NCBI RefSeq assembly: GCF_006345805.1
Contig: NC_043022.1
Location: 14,074,001-14,138,000 of the forward strand
DNA: 64,000 bases
Reading direction: 5' to 3'
From: Octopus sinensis
Lineage: Eukaryota
Shown: positions 10,906 through 56,017 of the stretch, piece after piece
Position numbering within the stretch: position 1 is the stretch's first letter
How the letters are laid out: each line of letters opens with the position of its first letter
Notes under the pieces: model-generated
Told to the model about the DNA's origin: nothing
Databases searched by the model: none
Seen by the model: the letters and a program-made list of their open reading frames with translations, nothing else
Made by a program: the position numbers and the translations under genes

Positions 10906-12905
10906 TATAAGCACAAAATAAAATATCACGGACCTTGTAAATAACAGATGAGCCAAATATAATTCTTAGTAGAGAACCTAAAGCTTACAAATGATAATAA
11001 AAATAAAGGAAATAAGTACAGACAGGGCAACAAATCCCAGGATTAATGGGCAGGGTTTAAAAACAGGAAAAACTATAGCAGAAGTATAGAAATACTAAAA
11101 TCAATAATAAACTCAAAAACCTGATATAGGCGCAGGAGTGGCTGTGTGGTAAGTAGCTTGCTTACCAACCACATGGTTCCGGGTTCAGTCCCACTGCGTG
11201 GCACCTTGGGAAAGTGTCTTCTAATATAGCCTCGGGCTGACCAAAGCCTTATGAGTGGATTTGGTAGACGGAAACTGAAAGAAGCCCGTCATATATATGT
11301 ATATATATAGGCGCAGGAGTGGCTGTGTGGTAAGTAGCTTGCTAACCAACCACATGGTTCCGGGTTCAGTCCCACTGCGTGACATCATGGGCAAGTGTCT
11401 TCTGCTATAGCTTCGGGCCGACCAAAGCCTTGTGAGTTGATTTGGTAGATGGAAACTGAAAGAAGCCTGTCGTATATATGTATATATATATATGTATGTT
11501 TGTCCCCCTAGCATTGCTTGACAACCGATGCTGATGTGTTTACGTCCCCGTAACTTAGCGGTTCGGCATAAGAGACCGACAGAATAAGTACTGGGCTTAC
11601 AAAACGAATAAGTCCTGGGGTCGAGTTGCTCGATTAAAGGCGGTGCTCCAGCATGGCCGCAGTCAAATGACTGAAACAAGTAAAAGAGTAAAGAGTATAA
11701 GCACAAAATAAAATATCACAGACCTTGTGAATAACAGATGACCCAAATATAATACTTAGTAAAAAACCTAAAGCTACAAATGATCTCTATATATATAAAA
11801 GGCAGTTTGTCTGTCTGTGTGTCTGTCAGGTTGTACCCTCACCCTGACCATGGCTTTCAACCGATTCTGATGAAACTTGAAACATACATAGCCCAATGTC
11901 ATAATTCAAAACTAACGCAGCGAAAATTTTGAAAAGTTCCCCCAGTTCTGAAAAAAATCGATAAATTGGACATGGGGTCGAGAATCTAAGCTTGTCATAT
12001 GCAACACATTTTCCGTTGTAGTTTATGCAACTTGCAATCAATTTTCACCAAACTCATGGTGAAGCTTAATGTTACCCTAAGGAACTAAATTCTGACGTTA
12101 GTTTTCCATGCAATACCTTACCATCAGAAAAAATCGAAAAAATCATGCCATTTTGGGAAATCGCATTCAAATTCAAGATGACATATTTTCGACAATATCT
12201 TTAACAAATTGGCAGGAATTTTTTTTGAAATTCACAGCGAGCATCACGTCTGCTCCAAGGAGCTATATGGCCCTTTTTATTCCAATAGGATACGTTATTA
12301 CTGGAAAAAAATCGGTTAATTACATCATATGTGGCACACATAGCAAACTGATATTTCTGCGATATTTTTTAAAATAACGGTTCAATGAGTACAAAACAGA
12401 GTAAAAAGGTAAAGGGCATTGCTTATCGACAAAGTTTCTTACATACCCGGGGAATGCTGGGCTATGCTGCTAGTAATAAAATAAAGGAAATAAGTACAGA
12501 CAGGACAATAAATCCCAGGATTAATGGGCAGGGTTTTAAAAACAGGAAAAACAATAGCAGAAGTATAGAAATAAATACTAAAATCAATAATAAACTCAAA
12601 AACCTGATATAGGCGCAGGAGTGGCTGTGTGGTAAGTAGCTTGCTTACCAACCACATGGTTTCGGGTTCAGTTCCACTGTGTGGCACCATGGGCAAGTGT
12701 CTTCTACTATAGCCCCGGGCCGACCAAAGCCTTGTGAGTGGATTTGGTAGATGGAAACTGAAAAAAGCCCGTTGTATATATGTATATATATATATATACA
12801 TATATATCTAATATAGGATAAAATTTTTCGAAAAAAATTCTATCAATGGCCAGCATTTAAAAAAAATACCTTTAAAGGTTAAATTCATAAACAATTTATT
12901 ATATA

Positions 12906-13390: not shown

Positions 13391-14190
13391 CTATAGTTTG
13401 TAAGATATTTGTTGTTTTTCTTTTCTTCAATTTCTGCAATTTCAACCCATCAATGACATCTATTGAGGTGGAAAACATTCTGTGCCGTATGAATATGTCC
13501 CTCGTTTAAGAAAGCATTGGGTTTATTTACATTTGTGAAGAAAAAAAGATACCCTTCCCCCCCACTCCTACCCTAACCCTAAAAAGATTGAAATGCAATA
13601 ATTGATACTAGGTCATAATTATGGGTGACATTTCATATGATACCGCTAGAAAAAAACTATAGTTTGTAAGATATTTGTTGTTTTTCTTTTTTCTTCAATT
13701 TCTGCAATTTCAACCAATCAATGACATCTATTGAGGTGGAAAACATTCTGTGCCGTATGAATATGTCCCTCGTTTAAGAAAGAGGTTGGGTTTATTTACA
13801 TTTGTGAAGAAAAAAAGATACCCTTCCCCCCCACTCCTAACCCTAACCCTAAAACAGATTGAAATGCAATAGATTGATACTAGGGTCATAATTATGGGTG
13901 ACAATTTCATATGATACCGCTAGAAAAAAACTATAGTTTGTAAGATATTTGTTGCTTTTTTCTTCAATTTCTGCAATTTCAACCAATCACTGACATCTAT
14001 TGAGGTGGAAAACATTCTGTGCCGTATGAATATGTCCCTCGTTTAAGAAGAGATTGGGTTTATTTACATTTGTGAAGAAAAAAAGATACCCTTCCCTAAC
14101 ACTAACCCTAACCGCAAAACAGATTGAAATGCAATAGATTGATACTAGGGTCATAATCATGGGTGACAATTTCATATGACACCGCTAGAA
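13391..14190. repeat. Three tandem ~270-bp units containing CCTAACCCTAA; probable non-autonomous DNA or rolling-circle element
   Basis: CTATAGTTTGTAAGATATTTG restarts near 13392, 13658, 13931; each unit ends ..TGA(T/C)ACCGCTAG(A)n. Element class is inference. Confidence 0.8.
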
Positions 14191-14470
14191 AAGATCTGAA
14201 AATACTTATGAAAATAGACATAATACATGGTATTCAAAAAGTCTCTGTGCTGTGAAGTGTTTTCATCCTGTGCATGCACAACTTGGCTGTCACTGTGTGG
14301 GCGGCCAAGTGTCAGCAATTGTGAGCCCTTCAGCCTGTCGATATGCTAACCAATGAAGAACGTAAGCTTTTAGTTGAATAGGTTGTTTTGAGCAGGAAAA
14401 AAATACACAGATACTGTGAAACAGAAGTTGAGTGAAACTTTTCCAAAAACTGTTGTTCCACATCGTGACA

Positions 14471-15169: not shown

Positions 15170-16255
15170 AAGACATCATCAGGAGGAACCACGACCGGTC
15201 TCGGCCCCTATTTCTCTACCGTTTTGACATGGCAAGCCCCACCCCCTTTCGGAGGTGTCTTCAGCTCTGGTGTTGGGTGCATGTCTTCTTTCTTCTGTTC
15301 CCTGGCCTCTTCGATGTAACATCAACGAGTGTCAGCAGGCGACTATGTCTTGTCAAATTTTTCTTTTTAAATACCTGCTACTAGGCTCCAGCAGGCAGCC
15401 CCAGCAAGTTGTCACATGACACTGTCTCAACTTTAACCGACCAATGAAGGTGCGTAGCCTCAGCCCACACTTTCTCTAAACGATACCATCATCTGTCAGT
15501 CAGTGAAGCTAATTCGGTGTCAGCTTGTCTCACCTAGTGATGTTATTTTCCGCCGGCATGTTATGACTTTCAAGCCACTTTTTGGTCTTCCCGCTTCAGC
15601 CATATATAGAAGCTGACTTTTTGACCACCTCCTGTACTCTCATTAGTTTTTGCAGCTCGGAGCTAGAAAAAACAAATCTTTTGAATAGCGTTGTCATTGC
15701 TCCATCCTTTCTACTCTACTCAAGGCTATTTCGTACATTTGCAATGGCCACATTATCCTTGGGTACAGCCCAAATTGCAATATCCAACATTTGAATTTTC
15801 CCGGCAGCGTTGTTCTGTCAATTGCCTTTAATCCTTGTTCTACTAACTCGTGTGTTTCTTTCCCTTGTTTCTTATCATTTAATAAATCTCTATACCATCT
15901 GCCGAGACTCTTTACTGGTTGTTCTTTCACCATTGGTATGTCTTCACCTCCTATCCTGAATTTCACTTCTTGCCTTCCTTTCACAAAAGCCACTCTTCGA
16001 GATTTTTTGGCTTTGAATTTCATCCTTGCCCATCCTATCAGTTCGTCCAACCGCTCTAACGTTCCCTCTGCTGCTTCTCTACTTTCCGATAATACAGTAA
16101 CGTCGTCCATAAAAGCCCTTAATGGTGTCTTTGTAACAGCTTTCTCACAGTTTGTAGATCTAAGTAACATTTCCATGACTAGCACGAATAAGATGACTGA
16201 TATCGTGCATCCGGCTGCAATACCTATTGTGAACTTTCCTGTTTTTAAGTAAATG
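15170..16255 (-). mobile_element. Decayed RLE-type non-LTR retrotransposon (HERO-like), RT/thumb region to 3' end
   Basis: GIAAGCTISVILFVLVMEMLL, PLRAFMDDVT (RT catalytic DD), WARMKFKAKKSR, PVKSLGRWY, LPGKFKCWILQFGLYPRIMWPL. The RT call is firm; the HERO label is recalled. Confidence 0.8.
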
Positions 16256-16454: not shown

Positions 16455-16812
16455 TGGCCGTTGCCAGCGCCGCCCCGACTGGCCTTGTGCCGGTGGCACG
16501 TAAAAAGCACCATCCGTTTGTGGCCGTTTGCCAGCGTCGCCTGGCCCCCGTGCCTGTAGCACTTAAAAAGCACCATCTGATCGTGGCCGTTTGCCAGCCT
16601 CGTCTGGCACCTGTGCTGGTGGCACGTAAAAAGCACCCACTACACTCACGAAGTGGTTGGCGTTAGGAAGGGCGTCCAGCCGTAGAAACATTGCCAGATC
16701 AGACTGGGCCTGGTGCAGCCTTCTGGCCTCCCAGACCCCAGTTGAACCGTCCAACCCATGCTAGCATGGAAAACAGACGCTAAATGATGATGATGATGAT
16801 GATGATGATGAT
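16455..16812 (+). mobile_element. Family-D SINE-like element with three ~62-bp internal repeats and (GAT)n tail
   Basis: TAAAAAGCACC motifs near 16500, 16563, 16626; GGCGTTAGGAAGGGCGTCCAGCCGTAG; tail GCTAAATGATGATG. Confidence 0.9.
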
Positions 16813-17057: not shown

Positions 17058-17720
17058 TTCATCATCATCATCATCATCATCGTTTAGCGTCCGCTTTCCA
17101 TGCTAGCATGGGTTGGAGGGTTCAACTGGGGTCAGGGAAGCCAGAAGGCTGCACCAGGCCCAGTCTGATCTGGCAATGTTTCTACGGCTGGATGCCCTTC
17201 CTAACGCCAACCACTCCATGAGTGTAGTGGGTGCTTTTTACGTGTCACTGGCACGGAGGCCAGGTGAGACTGGTAACGGCCACGAACGGATGGTGCTTTT
17301 TACGTGCCACTGGCACGGAGGCCAGGCGAGGCTGGCAACGGCCACGATCGGATGGTGCTTTTTATGTGCCACTGGCACGGAGGCCAGGCGAGACTGGCAA
17401 CGTCCACGAACGGATGGTGCTTTTTACGTGCCACCGGCACGGAAGCCAGTCAGGGCAGCACTGGCAACGGCCACGTTTGGATGGTTCTCTTATGTGCCAC
17501 CAGCACTGGTATCACAGCAACAATTTCCATTCATGTTGATCGATTTTGATTTTTGATTTTTGATTTTTACTTGTCTCAACAGGTCTTCACAAGTAGGGTT
17601 TTGTGTCCCAAGAAGGAAAGGTATGCATAAGTGGACTGAGGCCATGGGTGATGGTCTCACTTGTCCTGCCGGGTTTTCTCACACACAGCATACTTCCAAA
17701 GGTCTCTTCAGAAATGATTT
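17058..17720 (-). mobile_element. Long family-D element with four 62-bp internal repeats
   Basis: GTGCTTTTTA restarts at 17231, 17293, 17355, 17417; the 5' extension (caacaggtcttcacaag) is shared with the copy near 50990. Confidence 0.85.
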
Positions 17721-17880
17721 ACCAGAAAAGTGTATAGTTTATCAAAACAGAAAAATTTAGAGGTTAGTAGAGTTTTTAGGAGGGGAAAGAAATAGTTGAC
17801 TCCCAAATCTATATACTTCTAACAAGAGAGGAGGGCACAGCCCCATTACTCTTGGGTTTATCTATTAAGGAGTTGTTTAA

Positions 17881-19025
17881 CCCTTTTGTTACCAACCTAG
17901 CTGACACCACCCCTGGCTCTGTAGTACAGATGTCTTGTTTTAATAAGTTTTGAATTAAAATCTCCCACCAAACCTTAGTCACAATTTATGTTCCTAACAC
18001 TAGCTGAATGATAACTGAGTTATTTTACTAAATTCTTTGTTATATTTAAAGTAATTGAAAGAAACACAGAGCATCTCAACAGAAATAGGGTAACAAAAGG
18101 GTTAAAATATATAATAGAGAAACTATTAACCCTTTTATTACTAACCTGGCTGACACCACCCCTGGCTCTGTAGTACAAATGTCTTGTTTTAATAAGTTTT
18201 GAATTAAAATCTCCCACCAAACCTTAGTCACAATTTATGTTCCTAACACCAGCTGAATGATAATTTAAGTTTATTTCACTAAATTCTATGTTATATTTAA
18301 ATTAATTGAAAGAAACAAAGAACATCTCAAAATAAATACAATAACGAAAGGGTTAAAATATATAATAGAGAAACAATTATTAACCCTTTCACTACCAACC
18401 TGGCTGAAACCACCTCTAGCTCTGTTGTACAAATGTCTTGTTTTCAAAAGTTCTGAATTAAAATCTTCCACCAAACCTTAGTCACAATTTATGCTCCTAA
18501 CTCTAGCTTAATGATAACTGAGTTATTTTACTAAATTCTTTGTTATATTTGAAGTAATTGAAAGAAACACAGAGCATCTCAACAGAAATATGGTAACAAA
18601 TGTCTTGTTTTCCTAAGTTTTGAATTAAAAATCTTCCACCAAACCTTAGTCACATTTTATGTTCCTAACACTAGCTTATTGATAACTAAGTTATTTTACT
18701 AAATTCTTTGTTACATTTACAATCAATTGAAAGAAATACAGAGCATCTCAACAGAAATAGGGTAACAAAAAGGTTAAAATATATAATAGAGAAACAATTC
18801 TTAACCCTTTCGTTACCAACCCAGCTGAAACCACCCCTGGCTCTGTAGTACAAATGTCTTGTTTACGTGAGTTTTGAATTAAAATCTTTCACCAAATCTT
18901 AGTCACAATTTATGCTCCTAACTCTAGCTTAATGATAACGAAGTTATTTTACTAAATTCTTTGTTATATTTGAAGTAATTGAAAGAAACACAGAGTATCT
19001 CAAAATAAATACAGTAACGAAAGGG
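17881..19025. mobile_element. Tandem array of ~221-bp piggyBac-type MITEs
   Basis: TTAA|CCCTTT..TTAC / GTAAC..AAAGGG|TTAA termini. Complete copies 17881-18101, 18130-18352, 18805-19025; fused copies 18384-18773. Confidence 0.88.
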
Positions 19026-20662: not shown

Positions 20663-21262
20663 GGCGGCGAGCTGGCAGAAATGTTAGCACGCCGGACGGA
20701 ATGCTTAGCAGTATTTCGTCTGCCATTACGTTCTGAGTTCAAATTCCGCTGAGGTCGTCTTCACCTTTCATCCTTTCTGGGTCGATTGAATAAGTACCAG
20801 TTACGCCCTGGGGTCGATATAATCGACTTAATCCCTTTGTCTGTCCTTGTTTGTCCTCTCTGTGTTTAGTCTCTTGTGGGTAGTAAAGAAATAGGCATTT
20901 CATCTACCATTACGTTCTGAGTTCAAATTCTGCCGAGGTCATCTTTGCCTTTCATCCTTTCTGGGTCGATAAATTAAGTACCAGTTACACACTGGGGTCG
21001 ATATAATCGACTTAATCCCTTTGTCTGTCCTTGTTTGTCCTCTCTGTGTTTAGTCTCTTGTGGGTAGTAAAGAAATAGGTATTTCATCTACCATTACGTT
21101 CTGAGTTCAAATTCCGCCGAGGTCATCTTTGCCTTTCATCCTTTCTGGGTCGATTAAATAAGTACCAGTTATGCACTGGGGTCAATATAATTGACTTAAT
21201 CCCTTTATCTGTCCTTGTTAGTCCCCTCTATGTTTAGCCCCTTGTGAGTAATAAAGAAATAA
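20663..21262 (+). mobile_element. Family-A SINE with three 184-nt tandem body units
   Basis: Head GGCGGCGAGCTGGCAGAAATG; unit starts at 20711, 20895, 21079. Confidence 0.92.
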
Positions 21263-21371
21263 ATATGTCAGTGACCAAAGAAAAAAAAAGGGGCCTGACA
21301 TATTAAGTGATTTTGGGCCATCATATTTCCCCTTCTCAAAGATTCCTTGTCTTGCAAGTTACCTTGGCGAC

Positions 21372-24300
21372 CCTGCCAGTGCTGGTGCCATGTAAAAAGT
21401 ATCCAGTCCACACTGTAAAGTTGTTGGCGTTTGGAAGGGCATCCAGCGGTAAAACCCATGCCAAAACAGACCCTGTCAGTGCGGGTGCCTTGTAAAAAGC
21501 ATTCACTTCACTCTGTGGGGTGGTCGGTTTTAGGAAGGGCATCCAGCTGTAAAACCCATGCCAAAACAGACCCTGTCAGTGCGGGTGCCTTGTAAAAAGC
21601 ATTCACTTCACTCTGTGGGGTGGTCGGTTTTATGAAGGGCATCCAGCTGTAAAACCCATGCCAAAACAGACCTGTCAGTGCGGGTGCCTTGTAAAAAGCA
21701 TTCACTTCACTCTGTGGGGTGGTCGGTTTTAGGAAGGGCATCCAGCTGTAAAACCCATGCCAAAACAGACCCTGTCAGTGCGGGTGCCTTGTAAAAAGCA
21801 TTCACTTCACTCTGTGGGGTGGTCGGTTTTATGAAGGGCATCCAGCTGTAAAACCCATGCCAAAACAGACCCTGTCAGTGCGGGTGCCTTGTAAAAAGCA
21901 TTCACTTCACTCTGTGGGGTGGTCGGTTTTAGGAAGGGCATCCAGCTGTAAAACCCATGCCAAAACAGACCCTGTCAGTGCGGGTGCCTTGTAAAAAGCA
22001 TTCACTTCACTCTGTGGGGTGGTCGGTTTTAGGATGGGCATCCAGCTGTAAAACCCATGCCAAAACAGACCCTGTCAGTGCGGGTGCCTTGTAAAAAGCA
22101 TTCACTTCACTCTGTGGGGTGGTCGGTTTTAGGAAGGGCATCCAGCTGTAAAACCCATGCCAAAACAGACCCTGTCAGTGCGGGTGCCTTGTAAAAAGCA
22201 TTCACTTCACTCTGTGGGGTGGTCGGTTTTATGAAGGGCATCCAGCTGTAAAACCCATGCCAAAACAGACCCTGTCAGTGCGGGTGCCTTGTAAAAAGCA
22301 TTCACTTCACTCTGTGGGGTGGTCGGTTTTAGGAAGGGCATCCAGCTGTAAAACCCATGCCAAAACAGACCCTGTCAGTGCGGGTGCCTTGTAAAAAGCA
22401 TTCACTTCACTCTGTGGGGTGGTCGGTTTTAGGAAGGGCATCCAGCTGTAAAACCCATGCCAAAACAGACCCTGTCAGTGCGGGTGCCTTGTAAAAAGCA
22501 TTCACTTCACTCTGTGGGGTGGTCGGTTTTAGGATGGGCATCCAGTTGTAAAACCCATGCCAAAACAGACCCTGTCAGTGCGGGTGCCTTGTAAAAAGCA
22601 TTCACTTCACTCTGTGGGGTGGTCGGTTTTATGAAGGGCATCCAGCTGTAAAACCCATGCCAAAACAGACCCTGTCAGTGCGGGTGCCTTGTAAAAAGCA
22701 TTCACTTCACTCTGTGGGGTGGTCGGTTTTAGGATGGGCATCCAGCTGTAAAACCCATGCCAAAACAGACCCTGTCAGTGCGGGTGCCTTGTAAAAAGCA
22801 TTCACTTCACTCTGTGGGGTGGTCGGTTTTAGGATGGGCATCCAGTTGTAAAACCCATGCCAAAACACCCTGTCAGTGCGGGTGCCTTGTAAAAAGCATT
22901 CACTTCACTCTGTGGGGTGGTCGGTTTTATGAAGGGCATCCAGCTGTAAAACCCATGCCAAAACAGACCCTGTCAGTGCGGGTGCCTTGTAAAAAGCATT
23001 CACTTCACTCTGTGGGGTGGTCGGTTTTAGGATGGGCATCCAGCTGTAAAACCCATGCCAAAACAGACCCTGTCAGTGCGGGTGCCTTGTAAAAAGCATT
23101 CACTTCACTCTGTGGGGTGGTCGGTTTTAGGATGGGCATCCAGCTGTAAAACCCATGCCAAAACAGACCCTGTCAGTGCGGGTGCCTTGTAAAAAGCATT
23201 CACTTCACTCTGTGGGGTGGTCGGTTTTAGGATGGGCATCCAGCTGTAAAACCATGCCAAAACAGACCCTGTCAGTGCGGGTGCCTTGTAAAAAGCATTC
23301 ACTTCACTCTGTGGGGTGGTCGGTTTTAGGATGGGCATCCAGCTGTAAAACCATGCCAAAACAGACCCTGTCAGTGCGGGTGCCTTGTAAAAAGCATTCA
23401 CTTCACTCTGTGGGGTGGTCGGTTTTAGGATGGGCATCCAGCTGTAAAACCCATGCCAAAACAGACCCTGTCAGTGCGGGTGCCTTGTAAAAAGCATTCA
23501 CTTCACTCTGTGGGGTGGTCGGTTTTAGGATGGGCATCCAGCTGTAAAACCCATGCCAAAACAGACCCTGTCAGTGCGGGTGCCTTGTAAAAAGCATTCA
23601 CTTCACTCTGTGGGGTGGTCGGTTTTAGGATGGGCATCCAGCTGTAAAACCCATGCCAAAACAGACCCTGTCAGTGCGGGTGCCTTGTAAAAAGCATTCA
23701 CTTCACTCTGTGGGGTGGTCGGTTTTAGGATGGGCATCCAGCTGTAAAACCCATGCCAAAACAGACCCTGTCAGTGCGGGTGCCTTGTAAAAAGCATTCA
23801 CTTCACTCTGTGGGGTGGTCGGTTTTAGGATGGGCATCCAGCTGTAAAACCCATGCCAAAACAGACCCTGTCAGTGCGGGTGCCTTGTAAAAAGCATTCA
23901 CTTCACTCTGTGGGGTGGTCGGTTTTAGGATGGGCATCCAGTTGTAAAACCCATGCCAAAACAGACCCTGTCAGTGCGGGTGCCTTGTAAAAAGCATTCA
24001 CTTCACTCTGTGGGGTGGTCGGTTTTAGGATGGGCATCCAGCTGTAAAACCCATGCCAAAACAGACCCTGTCAGTGCGGGTGCCTTGTAAAAAGCATTCA
24101 CTTCACTCTGGGGGTGGTCGGTTTTAGGATGGGCATCCAGCTGTAAAACCCATGCCAAAACAGACCCTGTCAGTGGGGTGCCTTGTAAAAAGCATTCACT
24201 TCACTCTGTGGGGTGGTCGGTTTTAGGATGGGCATCCAGTTGTAAAACCCATGCCAAAACAGACCCTGTCAGTGCGGGTGCCTTGTAAAAAGCATTCACT

Positions 24301-33266: not shown

Positions 33267-33584
33267 AGTGAAGCCTGGTGCAGAGTTCTGCCTGGCCAGC
33301 CTCTGCCAAACTGTCCAACCCATACCAGCATGGAAAGCAGACACTAAATGATGATGAGCCATATTGTAGATGAGCACTTCCTTGAATTCCAGTTAACGGA
33401 GTGTTTATAAGTGGATGCTTTCTTTAGCGGAAACCGTTTGTCCGTACTTAAATTCCAAGGTTAATTTATAAGTCACGGAGCATAAACACTGTAAGGTGAA
33501 GGAAGACAGAGATGGTAGACTATTTAGTCGTTTATTGTCCTTAAACGAGATAAACATAGGTCACGTAATACACTGTAACATTAA

Positions 33585-50154: not shown

Positions 50155-51150
50155 TCAAATGGAAATTGTAGTTAAGATACCCGTGATGGTGACACGTAAA
50201 AAGTACCGTCCGAACGTGGCAGATGCCAGCGCCGCCTGACTGGTGTCCGTGTCGGTGACACATAAAAACACCAACCGATCGTGGCTGTTTGCCAGCCTCC
50301 TCTGGCCCCTGTGCCGGCGGCACGTAAAAAACACCCACTACACTGTGGTTGGTGTTAGGAAGGGCATCCAGCCGTAGAAACACTGTCAGATCAGACTGGA
50401 GCCTGGTGCAGCCTCCTGGCTTCCCAGACCCCGGTCGAACTGTCCAACCCATGCTAGCATGGAAAACGGATGTTAAACGATGATAGATAGGTGAGTGGCT
50501 GGATAAATAGGTCGAAAGACAGACATAGAGAAACTGACAGACAGACTGACAGATAGATAGATAGATAGGTAGATGTGTTGCTTAATATGTGTGTGAAGAT
50601 AGGGACCTCCATATACATATGCATGTTTGTATGTATACGTGTACATGTGTGTGTGTATGTGTGTATTTATATATAGATCATCATCACTGTCATTGTTTAT
50701 CATCTGCTTTCCATGCTGGCATGGGTTGCATGGTTTGACTGAGGACTGGCAAGCTGAGAGGCTGCACCAAGGTCCAATCCGATTCGGCTAGGTTTCTACA
50801 GCTGGATGCCTTTCCTAATGCCAAATACACCAAGAGTGAAGTGGCTGCTTTTATGTGCCACCAGCATGGGTGCCAGTCTGGTGTCACTGGCATCTGTCAC
50901 ACTTGAATGATGCTTTTTACATGCCACCGGCACAGGTGCCAGTCAGGTGACACAGGCCCCGGCCATGACTATGGTTTCACTCGGTCCAACAGGTCTTCAC
51001 AAGCACGGCATATTGCCCAACGACTGAAGGGGTGCTTTTAAAGGGGCCCATTATGCAACACCGGCATTGGTCATGACTACGATCTCACTTGGCTTGCCGT
51101 GTTTTCTCAAGTATGGCATATCGCTAAAGGTCTCAGTTACTTGTCATTGT
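50155..51150. mobile_element. Tail-to-tail pair of family-D elements
   Basis: Plus copy 50155-50485 ending GTTAAACGATGAT; minus copy ~50685-51150 starting CATCTGCTTTCCATGC. Confidence 0.82.
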
Positions 51151-51289
51151 CCACCAGACAAGGGATCGGGGGACCCTGTCAAAGGCTTTCTCCATGTTAA
51201 CAAAACCCAAGTACAGACTCTTGCCATTTAATAATAATAACGATGATGATGATGATGGTGATGATGATGATGATGATGATTATTATTAG

Positions 51290-55346: not shown

Positions 55347-56017
55347 GGCGAACTGGCAGAAATGTTAGCACGCCGGGTGAAATGGTTAGCGGTATTTCGT
55401 CTGCCTCTACGTTCTGAGTTCAAATTCCGCCAAGGTCAACTTTGCCTTTCATCCTTTCAGGGTCAATTAAATAAGTACCAGTTACGCACTGGGGTCGATA
55501 TAATCGACTTAAGCCATTTGTCTGTTCTTGTTTGTCCCCTCTGTGTTTAGCCCCTTGTGGGTAGTAAAGAAATAGGTATTTCATCTGCCACTACGTTCTG
55601 AGTTCAAATTCCACCGAGGTCAACTTTGCCTTTCATCCTTTCGGGGTCGATTAAATAAGTACCAGTTACACACTGAGGTCAACATAATCCATTTGTCTGT
55701 CCTTGTTTGTCTCCTCTGTGTTTAGCCCCTTGTGGGTAGTAAAGAAATAGGTATTTCATCTGCCGCTATGTTCTGAGTTCAAATTCCACCGAGGTCAACT
55801 TTGCCTTTCATCCTTTCGGGGTCGATTAAATAAGTACCAGTTACACACTGGGGTCAACATAATCCATTTGTCTGTCCTTGTTTGTCTCCTCTGTGTTTAG
55901 CCCCTTGTGGGTAGTAAAGAAATAGGTATTTCATCTGCCGCTATGTTCTGAGTTCAAATTCCGCCGAGGTCAACTTTGCCTTTCATCCTTTCGGGGTCAA
56001 TTAAATAAGTACCAGTT
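55347..56017 (+). mobile_element. Family-A SINE with 3.5 tandem body units
   Basis: Unit starts at 55392, 55576, 55751, 55926; units 2 and 3 are 175 nt owing to a shared 9-nt deletion. Confidence 0.92.

What the first reader, a model, noticed from the sequence alone, without database searches (positions are those of the whole stretch)
21340..33357. A 12-kb satellite born inside one SINE copy, with the parent's ends still attached
Seen: ~119 copies of a 100-bp unit. The unit aligns with the central block of dispersed family D (GGCACGTAAAAAGCACCCACTACACTC..GGCGTTAGGAAGGGCATCCAGCTGTAG vs GGTGCCTTGTAAAAAGCATTCACTTCACTC..GGTTTTAGGAAGGGCATCCAGCTGTAA). The first unit (21372-21471) is clearly more diverged and follows family-D-like sequence. 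The last unit runs into the family-D tail and (GAT)n (33267-33357). The junction uses GAC microhomology (ggcGAC|cctgcc vs acaGAC|cctgtc). Inference: one duplication inside a single insertion, then expansion and homogenisation. TE-derived satellites are known, but both parental ends are rarely retained. The GGAAGGGCATCC..GTAAAA motif is what I recall as the Meta-domain SINE core, so a conserved domain may be what was amplified.
Basis: partly seen in the sequence, partly recalled or inferred. Interest (0 to 1): 0.8.

Follow-up and report, generated by a model that had tools for sequence, protein, structure and literature searches.

The report
Retroposon-born 100-bp satellite array in octopus
A 12-kb run of 119 near-identical 100-bp repeats grew out of the middle of one old octopus retroposon copy whose two ends still flank it, which is a clean cephalopod example of a known route from mobile element to satellite DNA.

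Summary
TRF finds one array at 21369-33263, with period 100, 119.0 copies and 98% matches. Unit 1 is 82-83% identical to the consensus. Units 2-119 are 96-100% identical.

The last unit runs colinearly into the 3' region and (GAT)n tail of dispersed family D (nhmmer E = 1e-42). The left flank is not D-like by a family-D profile. However, 21334-21468 (flank plus unit 1) matches an independent dispersed copy in Octopus vulgaris at 88% over 135 bp. The parent was therefore an older, short "D2-type" relative of D, and both of its ends are present.

The unit lies between two GAC(N)CTG short repeats. Variants are clustered, with a weak 300-bp periodicity. The ancestral allele is enriched at the left edge. 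No SINE has inserted into the 11.9 kb.

Best reading: an internal duplication in one insertion, followed by expansion and homogenisation.

- **Not shown:** that the parent is a true SINE, that the core is the Meta-domain, any target-site duplication (TSD), the real copy number, or that this locus is unique in the genome.
- **Precedent:** SINE-derived satellites with attached SINE ends are already described in squamates, and a SINE-derived satellite is known in a limpet.

This is a new member of a known kind, of moderate interest.

The parts
21318..21327 (.). Candidate left target-site duplication, CCATCATATT. Not significant.
   Evidence: It resembles CCATATT immediately after the tail. Local-alignment tests give p of about 0.09-0.18, so the result is inconclusive.
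21328..21368 (+). Retained 5' region of the parental D2-type retroposon. Homology to other copies starts at 21334, at TCTCAAAGATTCC...
   Evidence: Window 21334-21375 matches O. vulgaris L020 16254-16213 at 86%, E = 1e-6. The match continues through unit 1 (135 bp, 88%). The same 5' motif appears in other D2-like copies. The region is not similar to the family-D profile.
21369..21468 (+). Unit 1: a diverged, non-homogenised first repeat.
   Evidence: It matches the consensus at 82/100 and is 89.9% identical to the O. vulgaris D2-type copy. It is joined to unit 2 in phase (..CCAAAACAGAC|CCTGTCAG..).
21469..33163 (+). Units 2-118: the homogenised body of the array, with no foreign insertion.
   Evidence: Units are 96-100% identical to the consensus. 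There are 18 substitution haplotypes, 4 of them major, and they are clustered with a lag-3 excess (z = 6.4). Mean pairwise divergence is 1.34%. No E, F or D family copy lies inside.
21522..21554 (+). Deeply conserved core (GGTYGGYKTTAGGAAGGGCATCCAGCTGTAAAA) within unit 2. It recurs at the same phase (unit positions about 54-86) in every unit.
   Evidence: It is 97% identical over 33 bp to a repeat family in JGI metagenome contigs of an unidentified eukaryote. Nothing else is shared with those contigs.
24661..24768 (+). 108-bp unit carrying a 9-bp internal duplication, TCACTTCAC.
   Evidence: It shows slippage at the TCACT TCACT direct repeat.
25868..26075 (+). Two adjacent 104-bp units that share the same TCAC insertion.
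   Evidence: A variant unit was copied to its neighbour, which indicates local unequal exchange.
33164..33263 (+). Unit 119, the last unit. It has the ancestral GGAAGGGC allele plus CCCCTACC.
   Evidence: It matches the consensus at 97/100. The same haplotype occurs at units 74 and 77.
33264..33349 (+). Retained 3' region of the parental retroposon.
   Evidence: nhmmer aligns 33172-33357 to family-D profile positions 134-317, E = 1e-42. Identity to individual D tails is 70-82%.
33350..33358 (+). Remnant of the (GAT)n tail, GATGATGAG.
   Evidence: All family-D copies end in (GAT)n.
33359..33365 (.). Candidate right target-site duplication, CCATATT. Not significant.

Best explanation
This is a non-coding, satellite-like tandem array that formed in place inside one old insertion of a short retroposon with a (GAT)n tail. 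The parent was a D2-type relative of the abundant octopus family D.

A 100-bp internal segment lies between two short imperfect direct repeats (GAC-N-CTG). That segment was duplicated once, either by slippage or unequal exchange between those repeats, or by reverse-transcriptase template switching at the time of insertion. The dimer then grew to about 119 units through repeated unequal sister-chromatid exchange and replication slippage. Turnover kept the interior nearly uniform, while the first unit and the unique 5' and 3' element ends were left behind as fossils.

**Shown:**
- the array itself;
- colinearity of both flanks with dispersed element copies;
- in-phase junctions;
- clustered variants;
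- retention of older states at the edge;
- absence of later insertions.

**Inferred:**
- the single founding duplication;
- the microhomology mechanism;
- the recent date of the expansion.

No function is indicated. The array most likely behaves as neutral or selfish satellite DNA.
For: **Array.** 119 units of 100 bp at 98% match.

**Right end.** Unit 119 and 33264-33357 align in one piece to family-D core plus tail, E = 1e-42 (alignment).

**Left end.** 21334-21467 matches O. vulgaris L020 16254-16121 at 88% over 135 bp. The flank-only part gives E = 1e-6. Other D2-like copies share the 5' motif, and similarity between copies stops upstream of it.

**Junction.** D2-type relatives read GGTGAC|CCTG at the 5' side and CAGAC|ACTGAAGC or CAGAC|AGTTGGAG at the 3' side. 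The array junction CAGAC|CCTG is therefore what an exchange between the two GACs would give.

**Real turnover rather than noise:**
- There are 18 haplotypes, clustered at lags 1-4 and 6, with a peak at lag 3 (z = 6.4).
- Two neighbouring units share the same 4-bp insertion.
- The ancestral GGAAGGGC allele is present in 9 of the first 10 homogenised units against 28% overall (binomial P = 8e-5).

**Recency.** Mean pairwise divergence is 1.34%. No E, F or D copy lies within the 11.9 kb, although the flanks carry roughly 0.8-0.9 such loci per kb.

**Family context.** Family D itself carries a variable internal 62-bp minisatellite with 2-4 units in the window and about 10 units in O. vulgaris L020. 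Two other SINE families in the window form short arrays. Retroposon-derived tandem duplication is therefore common in this genome.
Against: - No significant target-site duplication brackets the structure.
- Unit 1 is closer to a copy elsewhere in O. vulgaris (89.9%) than to the array consensus (83%). With D2-type copies as outgroup, the array lineage carries about 12-13 derived changes per 100 bp against about 4-5 in unit 1. A simple clock-like split of two sister units does not predict this.
- Only about three derived states are shared exclusively by unit 1 and the array.
- The genome-wide distribution of the monomer could not be examined. No unexpanded ortholog was found, and L020 is not orthologous because its flanks do not align.
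- The copy number rests on one assembly. Many of the 1-bp deletions fall in homopolymer runs, which could be read errors.
Confidence: 0.68

Rival explanations
1. The array belongs to a multi-locus satellite or to a retrotransposed multimer. A D2-type master copy already carried two or more 100-bp units and spread by retroposition, or the satellite moved between loci. This locus would then be one of many that expanded, and not the birthplace.
For: In squamates, SINE-derived satellites with attached SINE termini occur at many loci per genome (PMC10702118). In this window, family E forms arrays with the same truncated-unit junction at three separate loci. Family D carries an inherited internal 62-bp repeat.
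Against: None of the 5-6 D2-like copies in about 100 kb of O. vulgaris sequence, and nothing in the other 52 kb of the window, holds two in-phase 100-bp units. This sample is far too small to exclude the idea.
Confidence: 0.15
2. The array is real, but its length is an assembly artefact. The true locus would hold far fewer (or many more) units, and the assembler over-expanded or collapsed a near-identical repeat.
For: Units are 98-100% identical, which makes assembly hard. About 20 units carry 1-bp deletions, mostly in homopolymer runs (CCC, GGGG, TTTT, AAAA), as expected from long-read errors.
Against: The variants are not random. There are four major haplotypes with regional gradients, a lag-3 periodicity, shared insertions in neighbouring units and an edge enrichment of the ancestral allele. 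This is the pattern of a genuinely long array read through, not of one unit copied by software.
Confidence: 0.1
3. The structure has a composite origin. Unit 1 and the 5' end would belong to a D2-type insertion, while the homogenised units descend from a different, D-like relative. The two would have been joined by ectopic recombination or overwritten by gene conversion, so the array is not simply the sister of unit 1.
For: The array consensus is no closer to unit 1 (83%) than to a D2 copy elsewhere (83.8%), whereas unit 1 and that copy are 89.9% alike. In the stretch CACTTCACTCTGTGGGG the array resembles family D (CACTACACTCT-TGGAG) more than D2 (CAGTCCACACTGTAAAG).
Against: The unit 1 to unit 2 junction is in exactly the same phase as all other junctions, and it is not a native D or D2 sequence. 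Unit 1 and the array share GGTGCC, the CTGT insertion and GTAAAACCCATGCCAAAACA, which differ from family D. Partial gene conversion inside an array born in place would explain the mosaic equally well.
Confidence: 0.07

Closest known systems
SINE-derived satellites (sSats) of squamate reptiles (Vassetzky et al. 2023, PMC10702118)
   Same: Both are tandem arrays whose unit is an internal part of a short retroposon. In both, a terminal unit continues into the element up to its terminus. Squamate arrays reach up to about 1000 units, and longer arrays are more homogeneous. The proposed route is also the same: a primary duplication, then amplification, then concerted evolution.
   Different: The host here is a cephalopod mollusc and the parent family is unrelated. 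Both element termini are retained here, which is a minor variant in squamates. The parent's SINE status is unproven. Multi-locus distribution and chromosomal position are unknown here. Unit length is 100 bp.
PcH-sat of the limpet Patella caerulea, derived from a Nin-SINE (PMC11121367)
   Same: It is a mollusc satellite whose monomer contains a large segment of a SINE that carries a conserved domain.
   Different: PcH-sat is a 179-bp, AT-rich, pericentromeric satellite that makes up about 10% of the genome. It was recognised only by similarity to a SINE of another species, with no parental ends at an array boundary. Only 26 bp of the conserved Nin domain is included. Here the conserved core lies fully inside the unit, and a single 12-kb locus is seen.
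Tandem-like SINE arrays in bivalves, TSD1-(SINE)n-TSD1 (PMC11481361)
   Same: Both are head-to-tail multimers of a short retroposon in a mollusc genome, interpreted as arising within or at one insertion.
   Different: Bivalve units are whole or 3'-truncated SINEs, with 2-15 copies. Here the unit is an internal 100-bp segment with 119 copies, and the target-site duplications could not be demonstrated.
Satellites arising from tandem repeats inside LTR retrotransposons in plants (PMC7004042)
   Same: The general principle is the same: short tandem repeats inside a mobile element seed long satellite arrays (title and abstract).
   Different: The element class, the host kingdom and the scale all differ.

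Membership tests
TE-derived (SINE-derived) satellite, sSat type | A head-to-tail array whose unit is homologous to part of a dispersed short retroposon. | tested here: met
   There are 119 units of 100 bp. The unit aligns to family-D profile positions 133/134-227 and to D2-type copies at 77-84%.
TE-derived (SINE-derived) satellite, sSat type | A terminal unit continues into the parental element up to its terminus. | tested here: met
   3' side: 33172-33357 matches D core plus tail, E = 1e-42. 5' side: 21334-21468 matches the O. vulgaris D2 copy, 135 bp at 88%.
TE-derived (SINE-derived) satellite, sSat type | Several loci per genome, with a preference for subtelomeric or heterochromatic regions. 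| not testable with these tools
   No eukaryotic genome could be searched by DNA. The translated-ORF search found nothing.
Classical satellite DNA | A long array with concerted evolution, where units are more alike than their dispersed relatives. | tested here: met
   The array spans 11.9 kb. Mean pairwise divergence is 1.34%, against 16-25% divergence from unit 1 and from D and D2 copies.
Classical satellite DNA | High genomic abundance and a heterochromatic location. | not testable with these tools
   Only this window and about 100 kb of O. vulgaris sequence were available, and no second array was seen.
SINE (the parent element) | A short, dispersed, non-autonomous element ending in a simple-repeat tail. 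| tested here: met
   There are 11 copies in 52 kb of the window and at least 30 profile hits in 100 kb of O. vulgaris. All end in (GAT)n. The collapsed D2-type parent is about 230 bp.
SINE (the parent element) | A 5' head derived from tRNA, 5S or 7SL RNA with an internal pol III promoter. | tested here: inconclusive
   ARAGORN and Rfam find nothing in the window, but they also miss the clearly tRNA-like families E and F. The D2 5' part is only about 40 bp. Long D copies extend more than 250 bp upstream, and one lies next to a short RT-like motif.
SINE (the parent element) | Target-site duplications flank the insertion. | tested here: inconclusive
   The candidate CCAT(CAT)ATT / CCATATT is not significant (p = 0.09-0.18).
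MetaSINE superfamily (PMC4824008) | A 66-bp Meta-domain that is 61-86% identical to the superfamily consensus. | not testable with these tools
   The consensus appears only in a figure. No text or supplement is held, and motif searches of the literature were empty.
MetaSINE superfamily (PMC4824008) | A tRNA-derived promoter immediately followed by the conserved domain. | tested here: not met
   In family D the core is preceded by 62-bp repeats. In D2-type copies it is preceded by a non-tRNA 5' part of about 40 bp. Caveat: the available copies may be 5'-truncated.
Highly conserved SINE domain (generic) | A core shared at high identity between otherwise unrelated repeats of distant hosts. | tested here: met
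   A 34-65-bp core is 92-97% identical between octopus D or the satellite and a repeat family of at least 400 bp in 19 JGI metagenome contigs. Nothing else is shared. The host of those contigs was not identified.

The most novel reading that the evidence does not exclude
The amplified unit is essentially the deeply conserved core domain of an ancient retroposon superfamily plus its immediate surroundings. If that core is conserved because something binds it (a partner-LINE protein, a host factor or small RNAs), then 119 tandem copies would form a concentrated binding or small-RNA-producing platform. Such a platform could, for example, act as a piRNA-type trap against the very abundant family D. 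The roughly threefold excess of derived changes in the array over its fossil first unit would then reflect selection or biased conversion, not drift.
Probability: 0.07. Interest if true: 0.7.

Novelty: new member of a known kind. Interest (0 to 1): 0.35.

Why it matters
Unambiguous cases in which a satellite can be traced to a single retroposon copy are few. According to the 2023 squamate study, the older SINE-to-satellite claims are inconclusive. In my literature searches no satellite of this origin turned up for cephalopods.

This locus preserves three things together: the parent's two ends, a non-homogenised first unit and a homogenised body. It therefore gives an internal time series for how a satellite is born and how its consensus drifts away from the founder. 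It also shows that the segment that happened to be amplified contains a domain conserved across distant animals.

It does not change the current picture of satellite origin, and no function is indicated.

Tried and rejected
1. **Protein search with a 143-aa ORF read through the satellite.** The aim was to find other assemblies that carry the array. There were no hits, so the multi-locus question stayed open.
2. **Family-D profile against the left flank.** The result was not significant. The flank was explained only after Octopus vulgaris loci were fetched via family-D ORF homologs.
3. **TSD searches with wide and narrow windows.** Neither was significant.
4. **Orthology of O. vulgaris locus L020 with this locus.** Rejected, because only repeats align and unique flanks do not.
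5. **Meta-domain test.** The MetaSINE paper and two related papers hold no sequence text or supplements. Motif searches of the literature returned unrelated papers. From memory, the motif also resembles the 3' part of zebrafish DANA. That is a lead only and was not tested.
6. **Host of the 19 metagenome contigs that share the core.** Pfam found nothing on the best ORF. The protein search returned only an unnamed Logan protein.
7. **Structured DNA as a driver of slippage.** The monomer folds no better than shuffles (z = -0.15).
8. **Rfam and tRNA scans of the window.** Both were empty.
9. **The array as coding sequence.** Rejected. Every frame has stops in each unit, and longer ORFs exist only where 1-bp deletions shift the frame.
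Full report
**Observation.** Tandem Repeats Finder reports a single array at 21369-33263 with period 100, 119.0 copies, 98% matches and no indel columns. Walking the array unit by unit gives 119 units.
- Unit 1 (21369-21468) matches the consensus at 82 of 100 positions.
- Units 2-119 match at 96-100%.
- Most units are 100 bp. The exceptions are a minority of 99-bp units, one 98-bp unit, two adjacent 104-bp units and one 108-bp unit.

The array is real and far beyond chance.

**Inside the array.** An alignment of all units shows 18 substitution haplotypes, four of which dominate with 48, 22, 16 and 12 units. The pattern has the marks of turnover, not of random noise:
- Identical non-consensus units are over-represented at lags 1-4 and 6. 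The peak is at lag 3 (z = 6.4), which is a weak 300-bp higher-order periodicity.
- Divergence is lowest at lag 3, at 0.94% against 1.34% overall.
- Two neighbouring units share the same TCAC insertion.
- One unit carries a 9-bp TCACTTCAC duplication.
- The allele GGAAGGGC is the state in unit 1 and in all dispersed relatives. It is present in 9 of the first 10 homogenised units but in only 28% overall (P = 8e-5). The interior is dominated by the derived GGATGGGC.
- The single-base deletions fall mostly in homopolymer runs. They could be slippage or read errors.

No copy of the three abundant short retroposon families of the window lies inside the 11.9 kb. The flanks carry roughly 0.8-0.9 such loci per kb. 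The array in its present extent is therefore younger than most of that activity, or turnover removes interrupted units.

**The dispersed relative and the right end.** Family D is a retroposon with a (GAT)n tail. The window holds ten copies and one fragment outside the array. A profile built from them has three parts:
- a 5' part made of a variable number of 62-63-bp repeats;
- a core;
- a 3' region of about 90 bp followed by (GAT)n.

Unit 119 together with 33264-33357 aligns in one piece to profile positions 134-317 (E = 1e-42). The array therefore runs straight into the 3' end of such an element. The tail remnant GATGATGAG is at 33350-33358. This 3' region is 70-82% identical to any individual D tail, so the parent is an old or divergent member.

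**The left end.** With the family-D profile or consensus, the 90 bp upstream of unit 1 show no significant similarity. The explanation came from outside the window.
- A protein search with a family-D ORF returned five "hypothetical predicted proteins" of Octopus vulgaris. This also places the window in an octopus.
- I fetched about 100 kb around those proteins.
- One dispersed copy there (L020 16121-16254) matches window 21334-21467, that is 35 bp of left flank plus the whole of unit 1, at 88% over 135 bp.
- The flank-only part gives E = 1e-6.
- Several other old copies in those loci share the same short 5' motif and the same character states (CTGTAAAGTGG, CCATGCCAAAACAGAC), and similarity between copies stops upstream of the motif.

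I call these D2-type copies. They are short relatives of D that lack the 62-bp repeats. The left flank from about 21328-21334 is therefore the 5' end of the parental element, and unit 1 is a fairly faithful D2-type core. Collapsing the array to one unit gives an element of about 230 bp. L020 is not the orthologous site, because only repeats align between the two regions.

**The junction.** In D2-type copies the core is preceded by GGTGAC|CCTG and followed by CAGAC|ACTGAAGC or CAGAC|AGTTGGAG. The array junction reads CAGAC|CCTG. The unit therefore lies between two GACs that belong to an imperfect GAC-N-CTG direct repeat 100 bp apart. This fits slippage or unequal exchange at a short repeat, or template switching by the reverse transcriptase at insertion. 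Three to six shared bases are weak evidence on their own. The monomer has no unusual DNA secondary structure.

**An unexplained asymmetry.** Unit 1 is 89.9% identical to the O. vulgaris D2 copy but 83% to the array consensus. The array consensus is 83.8% identical to that same copy. With D2-type copies as outgroup, the array lineage carries about 12-13 derived changes per 100 bp and unit 1 about 4-5. Three explanations are open:
- the homogenised array evolves faster than its fossil edge;
- part of its consensus was overwritten by conversion from D-type copies, since one stretch is more D-like than D2-like;
- the founder was not the sister of unit 1.

The in-phase unit 1 to unit 2 junction argues that unit 1 is a genuine first repeat, so I favour the first two. 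This point lowers my confidence in the simple story.

**The conserved core.** A scan of JGI metagenome contigs with a 22-nt motif common to D and the satellite found 19 contigs of an unidentified eukaryote. These contigs share with the octopus elements only a 34-65-bp core, GGTTGGYGTTAGGAAGGGCATCCAGCTGTAAAA, at 92-97% identity. The core sits inside an otherwise unrelated repeat of at least 400 bp.

Whether it is the Meta-domain could not be tested. The consensus exists only in a figure. The published architecture, a tRNA head immediately followed by the domain (PMC4824008), is not seen in the copies available here. No tRNA-like head was detected. Those tools also miss the obviously tRNA-like families E and F, so the SINE status of the parent stays open. 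Long D copies extend more than 250 bp further upstream.

**Mechanism and rivals.** The best-supported reading has four steps:
1. One D2-type insertion.
2. One internal duplication between short repeats.
3. Growth by unequal exchange and slippage.
4. Homogenisation that spares the first unit and the unique ends.

The rivals are as follows:
- The array may be one of many loci of a satellite or of a retrotransposed multimer. This is not excluded, because no eukaryotic genome could be searched by DNA and the translated-ORF route gave nothing.
- The copy number may be an assembly artefact. This is unlikely to change the nature of the locus, given the structured variants.
- The origin may be composite, as raised by the asymmetry described above.

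**Comparison with what is known.** SINE-derived satellites with a terminal unit reaching the SINE terminus are described across squamates. Those arrays reach up to about 1000 units, and both termini are retained as a minor variant (PMC10702118). A limpet satellite derives from a Nin-SINE (PMC11121367). Bivalve SINEs form TSD-(SINE)n-TSD multimers (PMC11481361).

The present locus works like these cases and meets the two structural criteria that could be tested. My literature searches turned up no such case for cephalopods. The window itself shows that retroposon-derived tandem duplication is common in this genome. It holds short arrays of families E and F, and family D carries a 62-bp minisatellite that reaches about 10 units at an O. 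vulgaris locus annotated as a protein.

**Verdict.** The core interpretation is supported, with corrections to the identity of the parent, to the "SINE" and "Meta-domain" labels and to the claimed rarity. This is a new member of a known kind: a tidy case of satellite birth, with moderate interest and no indication of function.

Noticed in passing
window 36840-43569: A 6.7-kb (GTA)n microsatellite of about 2247 units at 86% match. Like the 100-bp array, it has no SINE insertions.
   Followed up: no
window 650-1110, 20713-21261, 55391-56017 (family E); 11124-11490, 58424-59566 (family F): Two other tRNA-like SINE families form short arrays (2-4.4 units) of 5'-truncated whole units. The unit junction is the same at separate loci, which suggests recurrent or inherited multimer formation. 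One such array ends about 70 bp upstream of the parent's 5' end, which is about 110 bp upstream of the 100-bp array.
   Followed up: partly
window 16487-16637 and 17230-17500; O. vulgaris L020 10006-10650: Family D carries an internal 62-63-bp minisatellite with 2-4.3 units in the window. At one O. vulgaris locus it reaches about 10 units and is annotated as a 221-aa hypothetical protein (P0001).
   Followed up: partly
L001-L019 (JGI metagenome contigs): A repeat family of at least 400 bp in an unidentified eukaryote shares only the 34-65-bp GGAAGGGCATCCAGCTGTAAAA core with the octopus elements. In five contigs two copies lie in inverted orientation about 1.26 kb apart. The host could not be identified.
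   Followed up: partly
window 15694-16185 (-) and about 51150-51200 (-): A reverse-transcriptase fragment (RVT_1, 27.6 bits, just below the Pfam cut-off), and a short FVNMEKAFDRVPR motif directly upstream of a long family-D copy. Family D may share its 3' part with a LINE or with an internally deleted LINE.
   Followed up: partly
window 13391-14192, 17877-19018, 35146-35328: Further low-copy tandem repeats of unknown origin: 269 bp x 3, 249/421 bp x 2-2.8, and 53 bp x 3.4.
   Followed up: no
window 21266-21304: A perfect 9-bp inverted repeat, ATATGTCAG ... CTGACATAT, around an A-rich spacer. It lies between the family E array and the parent's 5' end. Its meaning is unknown.
   Followed up: no
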